Made by a program: the position numbers and the translations under genes
The notes under the pieces: generated by a model
The model's input: only the letters and a program-made list of their open reading frames with translations
Database searches by the model: none
What the model was told of the DNA's origin: nothing
Assembly: GCF_000315625.1 (NCBI RefSeq)
Contig: NW_005434586.1
Span: 238,604-302,603 of the forward strand
DNA length: 64,000 nucleotides
From: Guillardia theta CCMP2712
Lineage: Eukaryota; Protista; Cryptophyta
Direction: 5' to 3'
Shown: positions 6,150 through 48,877 of the stretch, in pieces
Layout of the letters: each line of letters opens with the position of its first letter
Numbering within the stretch: the first letter of the stretch is position 1

Positions 6150-6760
6150 TTCAGTCCTGTTTACGCCGCACGGTCCCGGGTGGAGTCACGTGACGGTGTC
6201 CATCGCCCCCCAGCTGGGGGCGCCCAGGCTGCGCCGCCGCCCGGCTGAGGTGCCAGCATGATGGGTCACCGGGTTTACTACCGCCGAGTCTTCCGAAGGC
6301 CGCGCGGCCCCGGCGGCGGGCCCGGCATGACTTCCGGCCGTCCGGTCGGAAGTTCCCGGACTCAGTCGGGATCGGATGGCACACACTGGCCGGTGACGGA
6401 CGGCACGGCGCCGGCCGGCCGGGTGGCCGGTCGGATCATCGGATTCAAGGGCCGAATGGCTCAGGCAACGGTTGCCCTCAGTGCCGCGGCACTGGCAGTC
6501 ACTAGTAGTAACTGCTTGAGAGTCAGCCCGGAGGCTCACGGCACGAACGGCGGCCCGGCGGCCCGGCCCTATACGGCGCCCGTGACGGGCGGGCCCCTCG
6601 GACTGGCCCGGGGCAGGTCACAGGCCGGGCTGGCACTCAGCTGCCAGCCTGCGGACCGGCCCTCGTCCGAATTGGAATCATCAAGTGACTGGGAGAGGGG
6701 CGAGGAGCGCGGCAGATGACCCGGCGTTTCTGAGCGAGGCGCTGGGCGATTAACCATTTA
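6150..6760. promoter_or_regulatory. GC/CpG-rich palindrome-dense island upstream of the NADAR gene
   Basis: Abrupt rise in GC with dense CCGG, GGCC and CGGCACGG words; no credible ORF. Same texture as other islands in the window. Confidence 0.45.
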
Positions 6761-10607: not shown

Positions 10608-10868
10608 TCAGTGCGCCCTGCTGGCTCGTCGTGAAATGCTTGGCAGCTCCGCAAGCTCGCCTAGGTGCCTCTGCTCCATCCTCTTCTGCACCAGCGCGAT
10701 GGAGTTAGCCAGGCACGAGAGTCTCCGTCGCTTATCCAGGGAGAAGCTCTTCCATGTCTCGGGGCTGAGGCTGAAGGGGGGCGGGGGAGGGCAGGAGGAG
10801 CAGGAAGGAGCGTCGATGGAATTGAGGGCGCGATGGGAGGGCATCGTCGTGGCTTGTGAAGGAGACAT
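10608..10868 (-). CDS. Small uncharacterised protein, family copy 1
   Basis: Frame ...FSLSPETWKSFSLDKRRRLSCLANSIALVQKRMEQRHLGELAELPSI is conserved in three copies with synonymous third-position changes. Confidence 0.55.
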   Translation of the reverse strand: MSPSQATTMPSHRALNSIDAPSCSSCPPPPPFSLSPETWKSFSLDKRRRLSCLANSIALVQKRMEQRHLGELAELPSISRRASRAH

Positions 10869-11159
10869 GTTCGTTGAAGTTGTGAAGAGAGAAAGTCTGC
10901 CAGTTATCGAGCCAAGGAAGGGATGAAATCAGGGATGAAATCAGGGATGAAATACTACAAGGCACGGGCCCAAAAATACGAAAACAACTCTCTTTGTAAT
11001 GAAACGATGACTTTTAAGAGAGGGGGCCGTCAGCATGTCAGCATAACTTACCGTTCTGCCGCCTTCATCGGTAAAGTCCTCCGTAGGAGTTTCACTCAAC
11101 TTTCCGATCTTCCCTCTAGTACCTAGTAAAATGAACAAATAAAAAATGCGAAGGGTTGA

Positions 11160-12550
11160 TCACGTGGGCACCGGGTAACTGCGGCTCTAGGGAATCTTCC
11201 CGGTCCCGCGGCCGTCAGCAATAAACGTGACATGACCCACTGACTGCGGCGCGGCCGCGGCTGGCAGGCGCGGCATACAGTACTGCGAAGGTACTCCGGT
11301 ACCGTCGACGGTACTAAAGTACTACGGTCGTACCGTGACTCAGTCACGTACCGTCCCGTCACGGCGTCAGTGACCCGGACTGAGACTCGCTGTCCGACCG
11401 TACCGTACGACTGACTCAGCTGACTCGGCGCCACTCACGGCGGCCGGGCGGCGTCAGTCACCGTACGTATGCTGAGGCGGCGCGGCGACCGCCGGGGGCA
11501 CCGTCCGGCGAGCGAGCGGCTGCCACGGCACGGCGGTACGGTCCGACAACATGATCCAGGGCCGGCCGCGCGGCGAATCGGCGGAACCGTTGAACGCCGA
11601 GTCAGTCCGATCGGTCACTGACGGTACCCGGTAGTACTACGAGTCCGTACGGTCCGATCCTGCCGCCAGTCCGGCCCGGAGTCCGGTCCGGTACCGTACC
11701 GTAGTACGGTCCGGTACCGTACCGTAGTACCGTAAGTAAGGTCCGAGTCACGTTGGGCCGCGCCGCGGCTCCGGCTGGCAGCGGCTCCCGGACCGTACGT
11801 AGTACTACCGTCACCCGTGACGGTGACGGTGAGCGGCGGCGGGCCGGGCCCGGCGCCGCAAGGCGGGAAACTGTCCGGGAGCTATGCCAGGCTAGTTCCG
11901 AAACCGTCGGACGGTCTTGAACTTCGGACTCCGAACGCCGCCGGGCGGCAAGTCACGCCCGCGGCCGTTGCCGGGCACGGTGCCGGCCCGTCACCCTGAC
12001 TGTGACCCGATCGGACCGCGGCCGGCCCGCCGCGGGTCGCTGCCCGGCCCGGGCCCGGCCCGCCGGCTGCGCCGCGGCCGCCGGGGCGGGACCGTCCCCG
12101 GAGCCCGGCGGTGGCGGCCAACTTAAGTTCAAAATCAGTGACGAGGACAATCAGGAGAGTCCGATCGTCATCATCTGAGGCCCGAGGAGGCTTGACCCTG
12201 ACTCGTGACACTGAGTCGCACAGGCCAAACGGCAGTCACCCGTTGAACCCGTGACCCGGGCCGCAGCCTGTGAACGACCCGGTGTTGAACTACAGCCGGG
12301 CTTGCGTAAAGAACTTTCGAACCCGGGCCCGGGTTCGAAAGTTCAGGCTTGTCCGCAAGCGGCTTGCGGACAGTGCCGGGCGGCCGCGCCAACTTGCTAC
12401 TATAGAAACTTGAATTGACTAGGCCTTGCCAAGTTAAGTGTACACAGTGCTGTTGCTTTTTGCTACTCACTGAGTACTGCCTGCCGGCCTCTGGCCGCCC
12501 GGCATTCTGGAACCGTTGAAGATTGAGTGAGGCTGTCTGTAAGGCTGGAG
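11160..12550. promoter_or_regulatory. Large GC/CpG island between divergent copies 1 and 2
   Basis: About 1.4 kb of GTAC/CCGG/GGCC-rich DNA with direct repeats (GGTCCGGTACCGTACCGTAGTAC x2) and perfect palindromes at 12311-12372. Confidence 0.5.
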
Positions 12551-12554
12551 TCAC

Positions 12555-12965
12555 ATGACTCTGTTGCTGACAGTCCTCCAGGCACGTGGGCAAGTCCCAA
12601 ACAAGCAACGTTTCTTCCGGATAGAGTTTCAGTTTACTACGGGCATCCTGACCCTTTTTCTCTCCTGTAGTGACTCCGACGGTCGACATCCATCGCCCAT
12701 GCTCGACACTCCTTCCTGCTCCTCCTGCTCCTCCTGCTCCTCCTGCTCCTCCTGCTCCTCCTGCTCCTCCTGCTCCTCCTGCTCCTCCTGCCCTCCCCCG
12801 CCCCCCTTCAGCCTCAGCCCCGAGACATGGAAGAGCTTCTCCCTGGACAAGCGACGGAGACTCTCGTGCCTGGCTAACTCCATCGCGCTGGTGCAGAAGA
12901 GGATGGAGCAGAGGCACCTAGGCGAGCTTGCGGAGCTGCCAAGCATTCCACGACGAGGAAACTAA
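12555..12965 (+). CDS. Small uncharacterised protein, family copy 2 (start uncertain)
   Basis: Near-identical inverted duplicate of copy 1 over about 175 bp, with an expanded 9-bp (CTCCTCCTG) repeat encoding SSC linkers. Confidence 0.5.
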   Translation: MTLLLTVLQARGQVPNKQRFFRIEFQFTTGILTLFLSCSDSDGRHPSPMLDTPSCSSCSSCSSCSSCSSCSSCSSCSSCPPPPPFSLSPETWKSFSLDKRRRLSCLANSIALVQKRMEQRHLGELAELPSIPRRGN

Positions 12966-13425
12966 CGAGCCGGAAACTTGGCCGACCAGAAAATTTGTAG
13001 ACTAGCATGTAAAATAGTGATACGAGTAAATTCCAATGCCAATTGAAAGTATGGTTCAAGATTCGAAAGGTCTACGTATGATTGTAAATAGTTGATGTAA
13101 GGGCCAGGACACGTATAATGGGTGAAAGGCTGGCCCACGACAACAGTACCAAGAACATGGTGGAACCAAGGAGCGCTCTATACATGTAGTTCTCCATGTC
13201 CACTTATCGTTTCAAGGTTGTTGAGCGATTGTACAAGATTCGATTGAGCGACTGATGAAAAACGTGGGCACAATCAGCCGGGGTTCAACGACCTGAGGGC
13301 CCTGTCCAAGAAGTTGTCCAAGAGTTTAACGGATTCCCGAGACAACATTCTACATGTCGCTTTACAACAAGTCCACTCACAGCCTACACAGCTAATGCAG
13401 TCGTCAAAGTTCTCGTCCCCCCTCA

Positions 13426-14505
13426 CTAGTGCGCCTTCCCGCACTTCATGAGCTTGTCGGAGAGGTTTGCAACATCGTCAAAATCATCCACCTTTACCAC
13501 CCAGGATGGGGGGATGGATTCGCCTCCACTAGCTGCAGCCATGCAAGCTCCTATGAAGCACCCACGGGAACACTGATCGCCACTCGCCATGATGTTTGTG
13601 CGGATCGCTTCTTGGTACGTCTTGGAGTTGAGCATCACGTGGACGGAGACGAGGAACGCGCCAGGGAGCCGGCAGCTGCTGCCCCAGTGGGAGGCAGCCT
13701 CGACTGCGTCGTGAGCAGCAGCATAGCTTATGGCTTCCCGCAGCTTCAGCCGCGCCTCGTTAGCAAGCGGGGACGAGTCGTTGGAGGCCCACTCTACGGC
13801 TTCCCTGGGAGTGCCCCCTGTCGTGAGGATACGATGCAGTATGTGAGCGCTTGCGATGCCATACATCACGGCAACGTCGTTGTTCTGGTGAGATCGGATC
13901 ACCTCCTCCACCCTCGCTGGCCAGTTGTCTTCGCCCAGAAACCTCGCGACGGCCACAGGGACCTTGACCAACGAGTTTGCTTGCGCGTCGTCGGCTCCAC
14001 ATGCAGGAAATTTCTTGCCCTGCTCTATGTTCGCAATGAGCTCTTTGCTAGCATGATTCAGCCTTCCTGAATACGCCTTGAGGTACTTGGCATATCCTTC
14101 GGAAAACGTTTGAGGATCAAAAGGCTCAACAGAGGTCAAGCCTTGCAGCACGCCCATACACTCTGCTCCGTAGGGGCTGAACTGACCGGACTTGTAGCTA
14201 TAGAACGGACAGCTAGGAGGCTCGAAGAAGGCAGCGTCTTTCTGCTGGGCGCCATCCTTGCCAGTCAGCTCTTTAATCTTGTTTGCGTCGTAGATCCAAT
14301 GCAGGCCCATCGACGCTGCATCGGCAACAAACGCTCCTTTCATGGCGTTGACTGCCCTCATTCCTACGGCATCCTCGATGGAGCAACGATCCGCCATCGC
14401 CATGTTCATTCCTCCTCCGCTCAGCCTCCCCACCATCCCCACCGCCAGGAGCCGTGCTAGCGTAAGCATGTTTGTGATGCTGGAGGAAAATTTCATCCCC
14501 CTCAT
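13426..14505 (-). CDS. ADP-ribosylglycohydrolase superfamily protein, SelJ/J1-crystallin-like, intronless
   Basis: GAFVADAASMGLHWIYD, PFYSYKSGQFSPYG, VIRSHQNND, SCRLPGAF, AIRTNIMASGDQCSRGCFIGACMAA. The true start may be one of several downstream Met codons. Confidence 0.85.
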   Translation of the reverse strand: MRGMKFSSSITNMLTLARLLAVGMVGRLSGGGMNMAMADRCSIEDAVGMRAVNAMKGAFVADAASMGLHWIYDANKIKELTGKDGAQQKDAAFFEPPSCPFYSYKSGQFSPYGAECMGVLQGLTSVEPFDPQTFSEGYAKYLKAYSGRLNHASKELIANIEQGKKFPACGADDAQANSLVKVPVAVARFLGEDNWPARVEEVIRSHQNNDVAVMYGIASAHILHRILTTGGTPREAVEWASNDSSPLANEARLKLREAISYAAAHDAVEAASHWGSSCRLPGAFLVSVHVMLNSKTYQEAIRTNIMASGDQCSRGCFIGACMAAASGGESIPPSWVVKVDDFDDVANLSDKLMKCGKAH

Positions 14506-27518: not shown

Positions 27519-35921
<8,403 letters not shown>

Positions 35922-36479: not shown

Positions 36480-37060
36480 GGGCCGCTCCGACTCCGTGCC
36501 AGTGCTGCCAGTGAGTATGATCGGACCGGCGAACTTCGGAACCCGGCCGGGGGGGCCGATAGGCGGCCGTGACTGAGGGCCGGGCCAGGCCGCAATGGGT
36601 CACCAGTAAGGTCACCAGTGGTGCCAGTGCCGGTTCCCGGACTCCCGGAGTTCGACCGGCCGAACTTTCGAACTTGTGACGCCGCGGGGGGCCGCTCGCC
36701 GGAGCCGAGGCTCCCGGACTCCGGGGCCCGGCGGGGGCGGGCCACAGTGACGGTACCGGGGCCCGCCGGGCCCCGGAGTCGCGGCGGGCCGTAACCGAGG
36801 CAGCTCCCGATGATGGGCCGTGTCGCAGTGAGGGGCAGACCCGCCCCGCCGCCGGGGCCCCGGACCCGGGGGGTCGGGCAAACTTTTTGACGGTCCGACT
36901 CGATATGCCCGGTGCCGCAGCTGCCCGCGCCCGCCGATTTAGTTCCGAGGTGCACTGCGCGGCGGCACAGGCTCAGGCTGCCACGGTACTGAACCAGGCC
37001 GCTGCCGGGATCCGATGATCAGCGAAGTTTTCGGCGGAAGATCCCCGCCTACTAAGCTAC
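36480..37060. promoter_or_regulatory. GC/CpG island upstream of the minus-strand gene starting at 35921
   Basis: Same word usage as other islands, including GAACTTTCGAAC at 36662. Confidence 0.45.
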
Positions 37061-37582
37061 GGAGCATTGAAATGATTTCAGTGCCGCGCAGCCTGTATGC
37101 AACTTGATCGGACCAAGCCGAACAGCTTCAGGGTGTCACTGCATGTATGAGGCGTACTAAGGCAGGCTCAATGATAGCAGCAACGCCGTGCCCTATCAGA
37201 CCATCTGTGCTAATCTTTCCTGCATGCAGATGACAGCAGAAAGAGAGTGAAGACCTTTGGTTGTCTGGCCCTGTCTATGGAATATAAGAATATTTGATCG
37301 TGCGGTGCAAAATCGTCAACATATACCATAGGGTGACATATTTAGCTCAGTGAGGGCAGCATTCGCGACATATTCTGATCAATAGATACACAGCGAAGTA
37401 GATGTTTGAAATGAATCATGTCATGTCATTCGAAGAACATCTCGACCTGAAAATGATTTCTTGCTCCCAAGTCTAGTGTATTAGAATTTGTCAAGGTCAG
37501 GCTGTATTGGGAAGTTCATTGATATCTCTACTTTACATTCTATATTACAGCAGCTCGCCTGGAGATGGCAAGATCGCTCGAT

Positions 37583-37933
37583 CTATTGCTCTACGTTGCG
37601 TCGTCGAGGAATGCTCGGCAGTTCAGCTAGCTGACCTTCAGGTTTCCTTTCGATTCTCTTCTGCACTAGCGCGATGGAGTTAGCCAGGCACATGAGCCTC
37701 CGTCGCTTGTCCAGGGAGAAGCTCCTCCAGGTCTGAGCGCTCACATTGAGGTGAGCAGGAGGGGAGGCAGGAGGGGAGGCAGGAGGGGAGGCAGAAGGGG
37801 AGGCAGGAGGGGAGGCAGAAGGGGAGGCAGGAGGGGAGGCGGGTTGAGAGAGTATGCTTGAAGACACGTCCAATTGGATCGACTGATGGCGGGGAGACAC
37901 GATGAGATTTGCGAAGCATGGCTGAGGGGACAT
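37583..37933 (-). CDS. Small uncharacterised protein, family copy 3 (diverged)
   Basis: MSP start, ASPP repeat linker, then TWRSFSLDKRRRLMCLANSIALVQKRIERKPEGQLAELPSIPRR. Confidence 0.55.
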   Translation of the reverse strand: MSPQPCFANLIVSPRHQSIQLDVSSSILSQPASPPASPSASPPASPSASPPASPPASPPAHLNVSAQTWRSFSLDKRRRLMCLANSIALVQKRIERKPEGQLAELPSIPRRRNVEQ

Positions 37934-38229
37934 GGCCCAAGGGGAGACGCTGGACGACGAAGGATCAAAGGGTCGATACGAGCTTTGTATTGAGGGGAAG
38001 GGGGCGGTGACATGCGAAGTAAAAATCTCTGTGGTAAAGATTGCTCACATGACCCAGTCACGAGACAGAGATCCACGAAAAGATGCTCTTTTTGGACGCG
38101 AACGCATGACACGCGATGATTGCTGCAAGGGGCTTACAGGCCCCTCGGGCTGAAGCGCCGAGGCACCGACCCTTTCGGAGTTCGATTCTGTACTGATAAG
38201 GCCCAAGAAACGGTTCACGGTTGGTAGTA

Positions 38230-38790
38230 AACTTGGTGCCCTTGTAAACCGTCCGTGACTCCGTGACTCAGTGAGCGACGCCGTTCAACCTGCGTTCAAC
38301 GGTTCGATACGAGGGGGCGGCGGGGGCGTCGCGCGGCGGCCGGCGGCCGCGGGGCCCGGGCCGGGCCACTGGGACGGTCCGGCGCGGGCCTCCGAGAGGC
38401 TCCGGACTCCGGGATCCGAGGCTACTGAGTACCGTAGTACGGCTCAGCCGGCCGGGCGCCGGGCAGGCTCACAGAGTCAGTCCCGGGCACGCCGTACGGT
38501 CCGACCGCTGGCAGAGTCCAAGCCGCTGAGCGGCCCGGGCCCGGGCCGGGGCCCGGGCGCCCCGGCGTTCCCGAGCCAGTCACGGCGGCGCCGGGCGCCG
38601 CCACGCCCCGGCCGCCGCAGCCCCGGCGGCCCGCGCTCAGCGGCTGCCACAGCGCCAGGCGCGGCGCAGGCCACCCCCGGGCTCAGACGGAGGCGGCGGC
38701 GGCTCAGCAGCTCTCAGTGAGAGTCCTAAGTTGGGCCGCCGGGGGCCGGGCCCGGACTCGCCGCCGGGCCGGGCCCGGGGAACTACTGGG
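38230..38790. promoter_or_regulatory. GC/CpG island between divergent copy 3 and the MFS gene
   Basis: GC-rich, GGCCCGGGCCCGGGCC palindrome, GTTCAACGGTT motif. Confidence 0.45.
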
Positions 38791-38860
38791 AGTTGACTCT
38801 TCGCGTACTAGACGCCTGTTTCGCTTCATGGCAGAGACTCAGGTAAGAGAGAGAGAGAGA

Positions 38861-39190
38861 GGAGGAGAGGGGAGGAGAATGATAGACGGCAGGTGAGAGG
38901 GAGGAGGAGAGGGGAGGAGAAGGATGGACGGCAGGTGAGAGGGAGGAGGAGAGGGGAGTAGAATGATAGACGGCAGGTGAGAGAGAGGAGGAGAGGGGAG
39001 TAGAAGGATGGACGGCAGGCGAGAGAGAGGAGGAGAGGGGAGTAGAAGGATGGACGGCAGGCGAGAGAGAGGAGGAGAGGGGAGTAGAAGGATGGACGGC
39101 AGGTGAGAGAGAGGAGGAGAGGGGAGTAGAAGGATGGACGGCAGGTGAGAGAGAGGAGGAGAGGGGAGTAGAAGGATGGACGGCAGGTGA
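38861..39190 (+). repeat. 42-bp purine-rich minisatellite x8, followed by a (GAGAT/GAGATT)n tract to ~39345
   Basis: GACGGCAGG recurs at 38885, 38927, 38969, 39011, 39053, 39095, 39137 and 39179. Confidence 0.9.
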
Positions 39191-46420: not shown

Positions 46421-46899
46421 CGACGGGGAGAGTGCCAGCTCGGCAGCAACCTGGCGTTCCTAGTAAGAAACTTCCCAGCACACCAGCAAAACGCGAGCAA
46501 TCAACGTCAAACAGAAGTCATGAAAGCATACACCAAGGAATCAAATCAAATCATAAACATCACACATCGCAGCACGATATGGTCTTCATTATGATGATCA
46601 TATGCCATAGCGCCGGTCTTCACCACTCACCCGCTCCCTCTCTCCATCGCCGACCCGTACAATGCCATTGTGAAGAGCCACAAACCAGGTCATCGAAAAA
46701 ACAAGGTTTTCCACTGCTTGTGGGGGGGTCTGCTAATTTGTACCCCCGGTATCATCATATTAAATTAAACACAAGTATCCCTAAAATAAGGGTGGGTACC
46801 TACCCCTACCCATACCAGTCTTGAAATAGCAATGAACGCTTTGATTAGATAGTTTACTCAATAAGTTTTATATACTACTATGACTCAGTGAGTGAAACT

Positions 46900-47330
46900 T
46901 TGCCTCAGTACAGTGTGACGACAGCCCGGGTGACGCCCCGGGCCTCATCTTCCGCCGTACCGTACCGATGAGGCGGCGCCGCCCGGGCCGCGTCCGCCCC
47001 CGGGCCGGACCCGGGGCCGCGTCCGATCAGGAGCCGGGAGTCAGCTGCTGAGCCGGCCGGTGACCGAGCCTCACCCCGGCGCGGCCCGCCCCCCGGCCCG
47101 CCGGTCACTACCCGGCCGCCGGCGCCGCCCCCCCGCGCCTTGCCGACCGTCGACTCGTCGGGTCGGAGAGTCACCCCGCCGCCGCGCCGCCCGGGCCGGG
47201 CCCTGACCACTGCCAGGTCACCGTCCGATCGGCGTCGGCGGGTTCAAGTCACTTGCTGCGGCACTGAAGTTCCAAGTTTCAAGTTTGCCGGCAAGGCAAG
47301 CCTCCGTTTCAAGTCAACGCGGTAAAACGT
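46900..47330. promoter_or_regulatory. GC/CpG island between divergent genes
   Basis: Same composition as other islands; AAGTT-rich right edge. Confidence 0.45.
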
Positions 47331-48877
47331 TTTACGGGAGCCCAGTAAACCCGCAATGGATTCCCATGGAAAGGCCCCCGTTGCAAGAATTCACTTGCAC
47401 CTGACCACTTGAGAGTCTGAACTTAGAAGACCAATTAATAAAAATACGAGCTATGATACCCTCCCTTACTCAATGGAGCACTGGAGTTTCAGGCCTTGCT
47501 AGTGGTGCATGCTTGCCGGGAGAAGTAAAATACATTTAACGAAGAGACCTCTTTCCCGTACGTTTCGCTATCAATTTCCTACGTAATTTTCTATAAATAC
47601 CCCATAGATTTTATAAAGTAAAACTCCCATACACTTTTAAAATATTAGAAATTAATTCCAATGGGGGCTGATGGGATGATGGGGTGTTTCAGGATAGTTG
47701 GTGCTAAGTACCGGTTAAATAATGGAGAAAATATGGGGTACTCTCAAAGTGCAACGACTGAGAGCACACAGATGGGGGTGGTGGGGGGCCGATCCGGGAG
47801 TCTAAAATCTTTTACAGGAAGCGATGCAATTTTTAAAATTTGAGAACGGGGGTGACGAAAAGGGATTCAAGGGGTGGGTTAGGTCGCACTGAAGATCCCG
47901 AGTGGGGTGGTTACTGACAAGTGCAGCCGAGGTACCCCTTACATGATCCTCCAAAGCACACAAAAGTGAGAGGGGGTACTCAACACAAATTCATGGGTAG
48001 GGTACTCAAAATGGATTGTTGTAGTACGTGGGGTAGTAAATTTTTTTTTGGTCCCTTGTGTGTGGCATTGGGAGATCGTTTTGAGATATAAAAATAGTTG
48101 TTAATTGTCAGAGGTGGGGTAGTATTCGTGGAATACCCAGGGTGGGTGGTGATCCCCACTTTTTACGGTGTAGAACTTCTGTACCGTAGGGTAGGCTGAA
48201 AAAAGGAGGGTGGGGTCAGTAAGAAGGTGGGGTGATGACATTGAAAAACAATAGGAATGGTGGGGTGCGGTCAGCATGATGGTAGGGTAGCAGATAAGAG
48301 CTATTCCATGGGTGGGTAGGGTATGTCCAGGATAGCCCTGTAGATCAAAATAGTAGGGTACGATAGGGTAACGAATAGGGGTGGGTAGGGTGGGGGTGGT
48401 TACATAAATTCGATGGGTCAGAAAAGACGTAGGGGTACTATTCAGAAGGTGTCTTTGCAGGGAGGGGTAATCCTTTACCGGTGTCATGAGAGGATTTTCT
48501 AGGAAGATGGTAGGGTGTAATATTCACCCTCTCTTTTAGTAGGTATGATCAAGTCAATGGGAGGGGTGTATCAGATTTGAGATGGGGTGATTTTTAATAG
48601 GGTGGGTAGCCTTGACAGTGGGTGGCCGTGGAAGGGGGCGGGGGTAGGGTGGGGTAGTTGCAATGCTGGAGAGAGCTATGGAACGAAGGCGAAGACAAGC
48701 GGAGGGGATGCGGTAGGAGGACAGAGGGAGAGGAGGACACCGAGCAGATAGAAGTAAGGTCAGGCCTTGAAAAGACTGACAGGCCATTGTTGGAGGAGGA
48801 GCTCGAGCATTCAACTGAAAGTACCATCGTAGAGGTTTCAGCAGGGCCCCGATTTCTGTAGTTTGGCGACACCAGAC

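What the first reader, a model, noticed from the sequence alone, without database searches (positions are those of the whole stretch)
10608..12965. Unannotated small-protein family: divergent inverted pair around a GC island plus a third copy
Seen: a ~50-aa module (TW[KR]SFSLDKRRRL[SM]CLANSIALVQKR....[HP].G[EQ]LAELPSI) occurs at 10608-10868(-), 12555-12965(+) and 37583-37933(-). Differences between copy 1 and copy 3 are largely synonymous in this frame (L CTT/CTA, A GCG/GCT, E GAG/GAA, P CCA/CCG, L CTG/CTA, D GAT/GAC, R AGA/AGG), while the antisense frame gains stops in copy 3. Each module follows an independently expanded Ser/Pro linker (SSC repeats or ASPP repeats), contains an NLS-like KRRR, and reads away from a GC island. 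Copies 1 and 2 share one island head-to-head. Inference: a real microprotein family under purifying selection, possibly nuclear regulators.
Basis: partly seen in the sequence, partly recalled or inferred. Interest (0 to 1): 0.75.

Follow-up and report, generated by a model that had tools for sequence, protein, structure and literature searches.

The report
Orphan small-protein gene family in Guillardia
The three repeated ~50-residue modules are real copies of a family of at least 56 small proteins (about 75-135 aa), found so far only in the cryptophyte alga Guillardia theta and its close relatives; the family is transcribed and under purifying selection, matches no known family, and has no known function.

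Summary
All three modules sit at the stated coordinates, and the listed synonymous differences, the antisense stops in copy 3 and the repeat-expanded linkers are all present.

The genome is Guillardia theta CCMP2712. ORFs in its loci are identical to proteins and MMETSP transcripts named for that strain.

The module is the C-terminal core of a family with at least 56 open six-frame matches in this genome, none interrupted by a stop. Of these, 41 lie in local clusters: 11 head-to-head, 9 tandem and 5 tail-to-tail neighbour pairs. Outside this genome I found it only in Hanusia phi transcripts, in an unnamed close relative in a metagenome, and on one JGI contig. There is no Pfam, PDB-sequence or fold match.

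AlphaFold predicts a disordered N-terminus, a short helix and a confident 23-residue amphipathic helix. pN/pS in the module is about 0.13-0.39, and only the sense frame is stop-free.

- Copy 1 and several paralogs already have "hypothetical protein" gene models.
- The KRRR "NLS" occurs in only 13 of 42 members.
- The GC island is one of this genome's generic CpG-rich islands and is not a family feature.
- The copy 1/copy 2 pair is a recent inverted partial duplication, in which each copy keeps only one ancestral flank.

The function is unknown. My best guess is a protein-docking helix.

The parts
10608..10868 (-). Copy 1: 86-aa ORF. The public gene model starts at the second Met and has 78 aa. 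It keeps the ancestral 5' flank and N-terminus, but has a new 3' tail after the LPSI motif.
12699..12965 (+). Copy 2: 88-aa ORF from the ATG at 12699 (the longest ORF starts at 12555). It is a partial inverted duplicate that lacks the ancestral N-terminus and keeps the ancestral 3' flank.
37583..37933 (-). Copy 3: 116-aa ORF, a diverged paralog (76% DNA identity to copy 1 over the module) with both ancestral-type flanks.
10625..10805 (.). Left arm of the 181-nt, 99% inverted repeat (core of copy 1).
12777..12957 (.). Right arm of the inverted repeat (core of copy 2).
12709..12796 (+). 9-nt microsatellite x9.8 that encodes the (SSC)n linker of copy 2, at the inner edge of the duplicated segment.
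37755..37840 (-). 12-nt microsatellite x7.2 that encodes the ASPP/ASPS linker of copy 3.
11201..12350 (.). GC/CpG-rich island (GC 0.68, CpG o/e 1.28, rich in GTAC and CCGG words) between copies 1 and 2. It is unique in the genome at the DNA level and belongs to a generic island class.
38101..38600 (.). GC/CpG-rich island upstream of copy 3. It does not align with the first island.
12994..13024 (+). Conserved 3' block containing TGTAA (13008-13012), about 45 nt after the stop of copy 2. It is shared with copy 3, the C31 paralog and the relative's contig L061. This is a candidate polyadenylation region (inference).

Best explanation
The three modules are copies of a lineage-specific, single-exon gene family of Guillardia theta. 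The only other sources I found are Hanusia phi, an unnamed close relative in a metagenome, and one JGI metagenome contig. The proteins are about 75-135 aa. Each has a fast-evolving, mostly disordered N-terminal part that is rich in Ser, Pro or acidic residues and prone to microsatellite expansion. Each also has a conserved C-terminal mini-domain of about 50 aa: a PF-x-L turn, a short helix with a conserved Trp, a Ser helix cap, a K-[RK]-x-x-L-x-x-L start to a ~23-residue amphipathic helix, a Gly, and an (A/E)-L-P-[SC]-[IVL] tail. The family has grown by local duplication, both tandem and inverted. The copy 1/copy 2 'divergent pair' is the youngest such event. About 200 bp of coding core was duplicated in inverted orientation. 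Copy 1 therefore retains the ancestral promoter side and N-terminus, and copy 2 retains the ancestral 3' flank. The GC island between them is one of the genome's generic CpG-rich islands. Inferred, not shown: there is no signal-peptide-like N-terminus by my reading of the listed sequences, and conservation falls on the hydrophobic face of one helix. From this I take the module to be a docking or dimerisation helix of cytosolic or nuclear proteins that bind a common partner, with the variable N-termini supplying specificity or turnover. I put about 0.9 on 'real, selected, lineage-restricted small-protein family' and about 0.25 on the docking-helix mechanism.
For: Family size and openness: 56 six-frame HMM hits at E <= 1e-3 in the genome, none with an internal stop. 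In the alignment of 24 Met-start ORFs of 72-116 aa, two Leu are invariant and the Leu-Pro of the tail is nearly invariant. In the module-only alignment a Ser is also nearly invariant. Selection: module pN/pS is 0.28-0.39 in six paralog pairs, only the sense frame is stop-free, and the three out-of-phase frames give ratios of about 0.9-2.9. Against the metagenome relative, module pN/pS is 0.13-0.38, while the N-terminal part ranges from 0.05 to above 1. Expression and gene structure: MMETSP transcript ORFs are identical to genomic ORFs (P0033, 'type:complete', 91 aa; P0014) and NCBI models are collinear with the ORFs. The divergent tail of P0028 is encoded contiguously in the genome, so there is no intron there. 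TGTAA occurs within 150 nt after the stop in 13 of 26 members, against 10% of background windows. Distribution: a profile search of 1.84 billion representative proteins found 20 true members. Every one I traced comes from G. theta, H. phi or the ENA metagenome contigs. Structure: AF2 with the family alignment gives pLDDT 92-96 for residues 31-60 and helices at 36-41 and 44-66. Duplication history: copy 1 shares its 5' flank and N-terminus with contig L061 (91.5%). Copy 2 shares its 3' flank with L061 (87%), with copy 3 and with the C31 paralog. The arms are 99% identical. The head-to-head pairs on C5 and C42 are also present in the relative, and in the tree each C5 member has its own ortholog.
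Against: No experiment or known homolog bears on function. The fold searches returned only noise (best Z 3.4). Transcript evidence exists for paralogs, not for the three window copies. Copy 1 has only a gene model, and the exact ORFs of copies 2 and 3 are not on record. Contig L061 could be a chimeric assembly through the repeat, which would weaken the ancestral-single-gene reading. That reading still rests on the copy 3 and C31 flanks. Absence from other cryptophytes rests on a 52-position profile, which may miss diverged kin.
Confidence: 0.75

Rival explanations
1. Regulators built on short linear motifs. The conserved K-R-x-x-L-x-x-L stretch would act as an APC/C destruction box, making the proteins unstable cell-cycle proteins or pseudosubstrate inhibitors. 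Alternatively it would act as an adjacent NLS and NES that make them shuttle between nucleus and cytoplasm. This is the nearest form of the reader's 'nuclear regulator' idea.
For: At the aligned position, R-x-x-L-x-x-[LIVM] is present in 30 of 42 members (35 of 42 if K is allowed). An L-x-x-L-x-x-x-hydrophobic-x-hydrophobic pattern is present in 30 of 42. The proteins are small, largely disordered and lack a signal peptide.
Against: The stretch is predicted as a confident helix with heptad-like hydrophobic spacing. Destruction boxes, by contrast, bind in extended form from disordered regions (established knowledge). Both patterns are degenerate and are expected in any amphipathic Leu-rich helix. 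The K[KR]x[KR] motif occurs in only 13 of 42 members and pI varies from 4.5 to 11.1.
Confidence: 0.15
2. The ORFs are terminal exons or fragments of larger genes, or remnants of a mobile element whose inverted ends mimic a gene pair.
For: The copy 1/copy 2 geometry resembles terminal inverted repeats around a 2-kb core. Some database entries for relatives are longer, at 168-271 aa.
Against: A DNA search with the whole 2.6-kb unit finds only the coding module and simple repeats elsewhere, and the core island is unique. The flanks of paralogs are unrelated. Transcript-derived ORFs are short and complete and match the genomic ORFs. The longer entries are upstream in-frame extensions of metagenome gene calls that carry no additional domain.
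Confidence: 0.04
3. The conserved sequence is a non-coding element, or the real gene is on the opposite strand (for example the 248-aa antisense ORF at 12171-12917).
For: The antisense frame that shares third codon positions also shows a low pN/pS of 0.28-0.56 and is open in copy 1.
Against: That frame carries 1-3 stops in several paralogs, including copy 3, whereas the sense frame never does. This low ratio is the expected echo of sense-strand selection. Amino-acid motifs persist at 21-35% identity where synonymous sites are saturated. Rfam finds nothing in the window.
Confidence: 0.02

Closest known systems
Uncharacterised 'hypothetical protein GUITHDRAFT_...' models of Guillardia theta CCMP2712 (e.g. 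107929-107931, 155246, 131720/99324) and Hanusia phi MMETSP/EukProt transcripts
   Same: They are members of the same family. They carry the same C-terminal module, and the G. theta entries are identical to ORFs found in this genome.
   Different: They carry no family name, domain or function. Most of the 56 or more genomic members, including the exact ORFs of window copies 2 and 3 that I looked up, were not found as database entries.
APC/C destruction-box degrons (ELM-type pattern R-x-x-L-x-x-[LIVM])
   Same: The pattern falls on the most conserved residues in 30 of 42 members.
   Different: Here the residues lie in a confidently predicted amphipathic helix and not in a disordered segment. 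No functional test is possible with these tools. This is a resemblance only.
Small helix-loop-helix docking or dimerisation modules (e.g. ID-type HLH, NblA, short coiled-coil adaptors)
   Same: Similar size, a short helix followed by a long amphipathic helix, and conservation concentrated on one hydrophobic face. Such chains appear among the weak structural neighbours.
   Different: Z scores of 2.6-3.4 are within noise for helical models. There is no sequence similarity.
Locally amplified lineage-specific gene families with inverted (palindromic) duplicates
   Same: 41 of 56 members lie in clusters. There are 11 head-to-head, 9 tandem and 5 tail-to-tail neighbour pairs. The arms of young pairs are 97-99% identical.
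   Different: The head-to-head excess is modest (P = 0.03). Older pairs are conserved between species without homogenisation, so ongoing gene conversion is not required.

Membership tests
Any Pfam-A family | Score above the gathering threshold for a curated HMM | tested here: not met
   No member of 24 reaches a threshold. Six unrelated families are hit by one member each, with best E about 1e-3.
Any protein with a solved structure | Significant sequence-profile or fold match | tested here: not met
   Profile against PDB sequences: best E 0.12. Foldseek: best E 5.3. VIA-align wide: best Z 3.4.
APC/C D-box degron | R-x-x-L-x-x-[LIVM] pattern | tested here: met
   30 of 42 members at the aligned position, or 35 of 42 with K allowed. 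The pattern is degenerate.
APC/C D-box degron | Motif lies in an accessible, disordered segment | tested here: not met
   AF2 places it in helix 44-66 with pLDDT above 90. This is a prediction only.
APC/C D-box degron | Cdc20/Cdh1-dependent ubiquitylation or binding | not testable with these tools
   Needs biochemical or cell-cycle experiments.
Classical monopartite NLS | K-[KR]-x-[KR] conserved across the family | tested here: not met
   Present in the three window copies but in only 13 of 42 members.
Bidirectional-promoter gene pair | Two complete genes head-to-head with a shared upstream region | tested here: inconclusive
   The geometry is met. However, copy 2 lacks the ancestral 5' end and N-terminus. 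Transcription starts cannot be tested here.
Transposable element with terminal inverted repeats | Whole unit or its ends repeated at other loci with unrelated flanks | tested here: not met
   Only the coding module and simple repeats recur, and the 1.2-kb core is unique.
CpG-rich promoter-side islands of G. theta (class proposed in earlier notes of this scan) | GC >= 65% and CpG o/e >= 1 over several hundred bases, unalignable between loci, rich in short palindromic words | tested here: met
   11201-12350 has GC 0.68 and CpG o/e 1.28, with 22 GTAC and 33 CCGG words. It is one of five such islands in the window, and it does not align with the island at 38101-38600. I did not test the promoter role.

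The most novel reading that the evidence does not exclude
The family would be a Guillardia/Hanusia-specific set of about 60 decoy or adaptor microproteins. Their single conserved helix would plug into one core machine, for example the APC/C co-activators or a nuclear transport receptor. The variable tails and rapid local amplification (inverted and tandem duplicates) would reflect an ongoing conflict or dosage race. This would be a new regulatory microprotein class in a secondary-plastid alga.
Probability: 0.08. Interest if true: 0.65.

Novelty: new member of a known kind. Interest (0 to 1): 0.3.

Why it matters
The work turns scattered 'hypothetical protein' models and many uncalled ORFs into one defined, selected and expressed small-protein family with a clear motif. 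That is useful for re-annotating Guillardia theta, a reference cryptophyte genome, and as a test set for finding microproteins in protists. It also documents a clean example of how an inverted partial duplication creates an apparent divergent gene pair. Without a partner or phenotype it remains one of many orphan families in a genome rich in orphans, so its general significance is modest for now.

Tried and rejected
- Pfam scans of 3 and then 24 members found nothing.
- The ESM Atlas gave no usable hit.
- The PDB sequence profile, Foldseek and the wide VIA-align search gave only noise.
- Rfam and tRNA scans of the window were empty, so the island does not hide a known RNA gene.
- The word-index protein search with the alignment returned only 3 proteins. 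With copy 3 as query it was swamped by low-complexity words and returned 1 protein. Neither result can be used as evidence of absence.
- Literature searches for the locus tags, for the ENA project PRJEB17505 and for G. theta small-protein families returned nothing relevant.
- I suspected an intron after the L-P motif in the GGSVDG subfamily, because the database tails differ. I rejected this: the alternative tail is encoded contiguously in the genome.
- I tried to fetch the weaker tandem arrays (C81, C79, C280, C71, C45) that match only the helix, to test for a wider superfamily.
- My slip: seven of the ten exact look-ups were cut one residue short and are invalid. Only the three window ORFs were looked up correctly.
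- I could not reconcile the order and orientation of two short upstream matches of L061 (to window 10986-11072 and 12539-12648) with a single inversion. I leave that detail open.
Full report
**1. The observation**

The window is contig C88:238604-302603 of an 87.1-Mb, 669-contig eukaryotic assembly. ORFs carrying the module lie at 10608-10868(-), 12555-12965(+) and 37583-37933(-). A six-frame search of the whole genome with copy 1 gives E = 1.4e-51, 1.5e-29 and 6.6e-17 for the three copies.

Copies 1 and 2 form a 181-nt inverted repeat, 10625-10805 and 12777-12957, 99% complementary. Copy 3 is 76% identical at the DNA level.

Over the 52-codon module, copy 1 and copy 3 differ by 20.5 synonymous and 18.5 non-synonymous changes, giving pS 0.54 and pN 0.16 (P = 7e-5 under neutrality).

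In six paralog pairs the sense frame has pN/pS of 0.28-0.39 and never a stop. The three out-of-phase frames give about 0.9-2.9 and carry stops. The antisense frame that shares third codon positions echoes the low ratio, as expected, but has stops in several copies, including three in copy 3.

The linkers are microsatellites: a 9-nt unit x9.8 in copy 2 and a 12-nt unit x7.2 in copy 3.

**2. What organism, and is it annotated?**

ORFs in loci of this genome are identical to named database entries:
- MMETSP Transcript_5305 (P0033, 91 aa, 'type:complete').
- P0014, a Guillardia theta transcript in UniRef.
- GUITHDRAFT_107931 (P0017).
- GUITHDRAFT_155246 (P0026).

The genome is therefore Guillardia theta CCMP2712 or something indistinguishable from it.

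Copy 1, as a 78-aa model from its second Met, is held by NCBI, UniRef and EukProt. The exact ORFs of copies 2 and 3 are not on record. The other seven look-ups in that call were cut one residue short by my slip and do not count. The family is thus partly annotated as hypothetical proteins, has never been named, and is absent from Pfam.

**3. The family**

A profile of the 52-residue module finds 56 six-frame matches at E <= 1e-3 in the genome, none interrupted by a stop. It also finds many weaker matches to the helix alone in tandem arrays, which I could not fetch.

The Met-start ORFs I aligned are 72-116 aa; longer database members reach about 135 aa. The N-terminal 30-60 residues are poorly alignable and rich in Ser, Pro or acidic residues. 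The C-terminal core has the consensus PF-x-L-S-x3-W-x2-F-S-x2-K-R-x2-L-x2-L-W-N-S-I-x-L-V-E-x2-I-x5-G-x2-A-E-L-P-S. Two Leu are invariant. A Ser and the L-P of the tail are nearly invariant.

AlphaFold2 with the family alignment predicts a disordered N-terminus, a short helix at 36-41 and a long helix at 44-66, with pLDDT 92-96 over residues 31-60. The hydrophobic residues of the long helix follow heptad-like spacing.

Nothing similar appears in PDB by sequence profile or by fold. Best values are E 0.12, Foldseek E 5.3 and Z 3.4, all within noise.

**4. Distribution and age**

HMMER read 1.84 billion representative proteins with the module profile and found 24 proteins at E <= 1e-3. Four of these are unrelated repeat proteins.

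Every true member that I traced comes from one of these sources:
- G. theta.
- The Hanusia phi transcriptome.
- Short contigs of one ENA metagenome project.

One further cluster member comes from a JGI metagenome contig. The ENA contigs are 80-95% identical to G. theta DNA, so they come from an unnamed close relative.

In the tree, H. phi sequences fall inside at least five subfamilies. The family had therefore already diversified before Guillardia and Hanusia split.

Against the metagenome relative, whole-ORF boundaries are conserved (91 aa against 91 aa in two cases). Module pN/pS is 0.13-0.38. The N-terminal part ranges from strongly constrained (0.05) to neutral-looking (about 0.9-2).

**5. 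Complete genes, not exons**

Transcript-derived ORFs equal the genomic ORFs, and the NCBI models are collinear with them. A suspected splice after the L-P motif was rejected, because the alternative tail is contiguous in the genome.

Half of the members (13 of 26) have TGTAA within 150 nt after the stop, against 10% of background windows. I read this as a likely polyadenylation signal. That reading is an inference from knowledge of other algae.

By my reading of the listed N-termini they are hydrophilic, with no signal-peptide-like stretch. In a cryptophyte this argues against plastid or periplastid targeting (established knowledge of bipartite presequences). I ran no targeting predictor.

**6. 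Genomic arrangement**

Of the 56 members, 41 lie within 3 kb of another member. The neighbour pairs are 11 head-to-head, 9 tandem and 5 tail-to-tail, a modest head-to-head excess (P = 0.03).

The arms of young pairs are nearly identical: C92 has 279 nt at 97%, and the window pair has 181 nt at 99%. C42 is at 82%. The C5 and C18 pairs are recognisable only at the protein level.

The C5 and C42 pairs are also head-to-head in the relative. In the tree each C5 member has its own ortholog, so old pairs persist without homogenisation.

**7. The window pair**

Alignment A3 and BLAST against the relative's contig L061 show the following:
- Copy 1 shares the about 30 nt upstream of the ATG, and the N-terminus, with L061 (91.5% identity). 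Its N-terminus also resembles those of copy 3 and the C31 paralog. Its sequence diverges a few codons before the ancestral stop and ends in a new tail.
- Copy 2 shares about 150 nt of 3' flank with L061 (87%). This flank includes a block containing TGTAA that is also present after copy 3 and the C31 paralog. Upstream of the duplicated core, copy 2 has unrelated sequence plus the expanded SSC repeat.

Each copy therefore keeps only one ancestral flank. This is the signature of an inverted duplication of about 200 bp of coding core, for example an inversion with staggered breaks.

The arms differ by about 1%, while neutral divergence from the relative is about 14-25%. The event, or the last conversion between the arms, is therefore recent.

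L061 could be a chimeric assembly path through the repeat. The paralog flanks independently support the direction of the inference. Whether copy 2 is expressed is unknown.

**8. The GC island**

Five islands with GC >= 65% and CpG o/e >= 1 occur in the 64-kb window. The island between copies 1 and 2 is unique at the DNA level. It does not align with the island upstream of copy 3.

By my reading of the GC bins, only about 6 of 27 family members have such an island within 1.3 kb upstream. Earlier notes of this scan describe these islands genome-wide as promoter-side features of G. theta. I used those notes as a lead and tested only the composition, the lack of alignment and the lack of family specificity. 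The island is context and not part of the family.

**9. Mechanism**

Shown:
- The family is coding, selected and expressed at least for several paralogs.
- It is lineage-restricted.
- It has a helical C-terminal mini-domain and a variable N-terminus.

Inferred: conservation sits on the hydrophobic face of one helix and the turn packing against it, and the proteins probably stay in the cytosol or nucleus. The most economical reading is a docking or dimerisation module that binds a common partner (about 0.25).

Whole-protein pI ranges from 4.5 to 11.1.

The most conserved residues also fit the degenerate destruction-box pattern in 30 of 42 members and an export-signal-like pattern in 30 of 42. 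Both patterns are expected in a Leu-rich amphipathic helix, and the predicted helix argues against a classical degron. I keep this as a rival at about 0.15.

**10. Verdict**

This is a real and well-delimited orphan small-protein family, partly annotated as hypothetical proteins, with a recent inverted partial duplication in the window. It is a sound annotation result of modest general interest. Its function is open.

Noticed in passing
window 34851-35921 (-): A 356-aa ORF built around at least 10 perfect tandem copies of a 60-nt unit (a 20-aa repeat, mostly 100% identical at the DNA level). It is a very young coding minisatellite.
   Followed up: partly
window 32733-33260: A long tract built on a trinucleotide (9-12-nt register, about 39 overlapping copies) that is open in several frames as poly-Ser, poly-Leu or poly-Cys. 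The window as a whole is unusually rich in GAG/GGA-type simple repeats.
   Followed up: no
window 38853-39190: A 42-nt purine-rich tandem repeat, 8 copies at 96% identity, directly beyond the GC island upstream of copy 3.
   Followed up: no
window 13426-14505 (-): An intron-less 359-aa ORF with a full-length ADP-ribosylglycohydrolase domain (Pfam PF03747, E = 9e-37), 460 nt downstream of copy 2.
   Followed up: partly
window 11201-12350, 38101-38600, 6151-6600, 36651-37100, 46851-47400: Five GC/CpG-rich islands (GC 0.67-0.72, CpG o/e 1.0-1.3, against 0.71 for the whole window). They are rich in CCGG and, in the first island, in GTAC and GGTACC words. The two islands I compared do not align with each other.
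   Followed up: partly
G000 contigs C81 (20.5-30.6 kb), C79, C280, C71, C45: Arrays of small open frames (about 100-300 aa) at spacings of about 0.6-4 kb (about 2 kb on C81). They match only the helix part (profile positions 16-40) of the family model at E 0.02-0.9. This may be a wider superfamily or may be chance. I could not fetch them.
   Followed up: no
L061 (ENA metagenome contig) against window 10986-11072 and 12539-12648: Two short upstream segments of the relative's gene match the window in an order and orientation that a single inversion does not explain. This suggests further rearrangement of the upstream region.
   Followed up: partly
N-termini of family members (alignment A1): Weak recurring N-terminal motifs: a Met followed within 3-10 residues by [ST]-H-[RQ], and Q-P-[CA]-F-x-x-L in several subfamilies. 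These hint at a second short conserved element.
   Followed up: no
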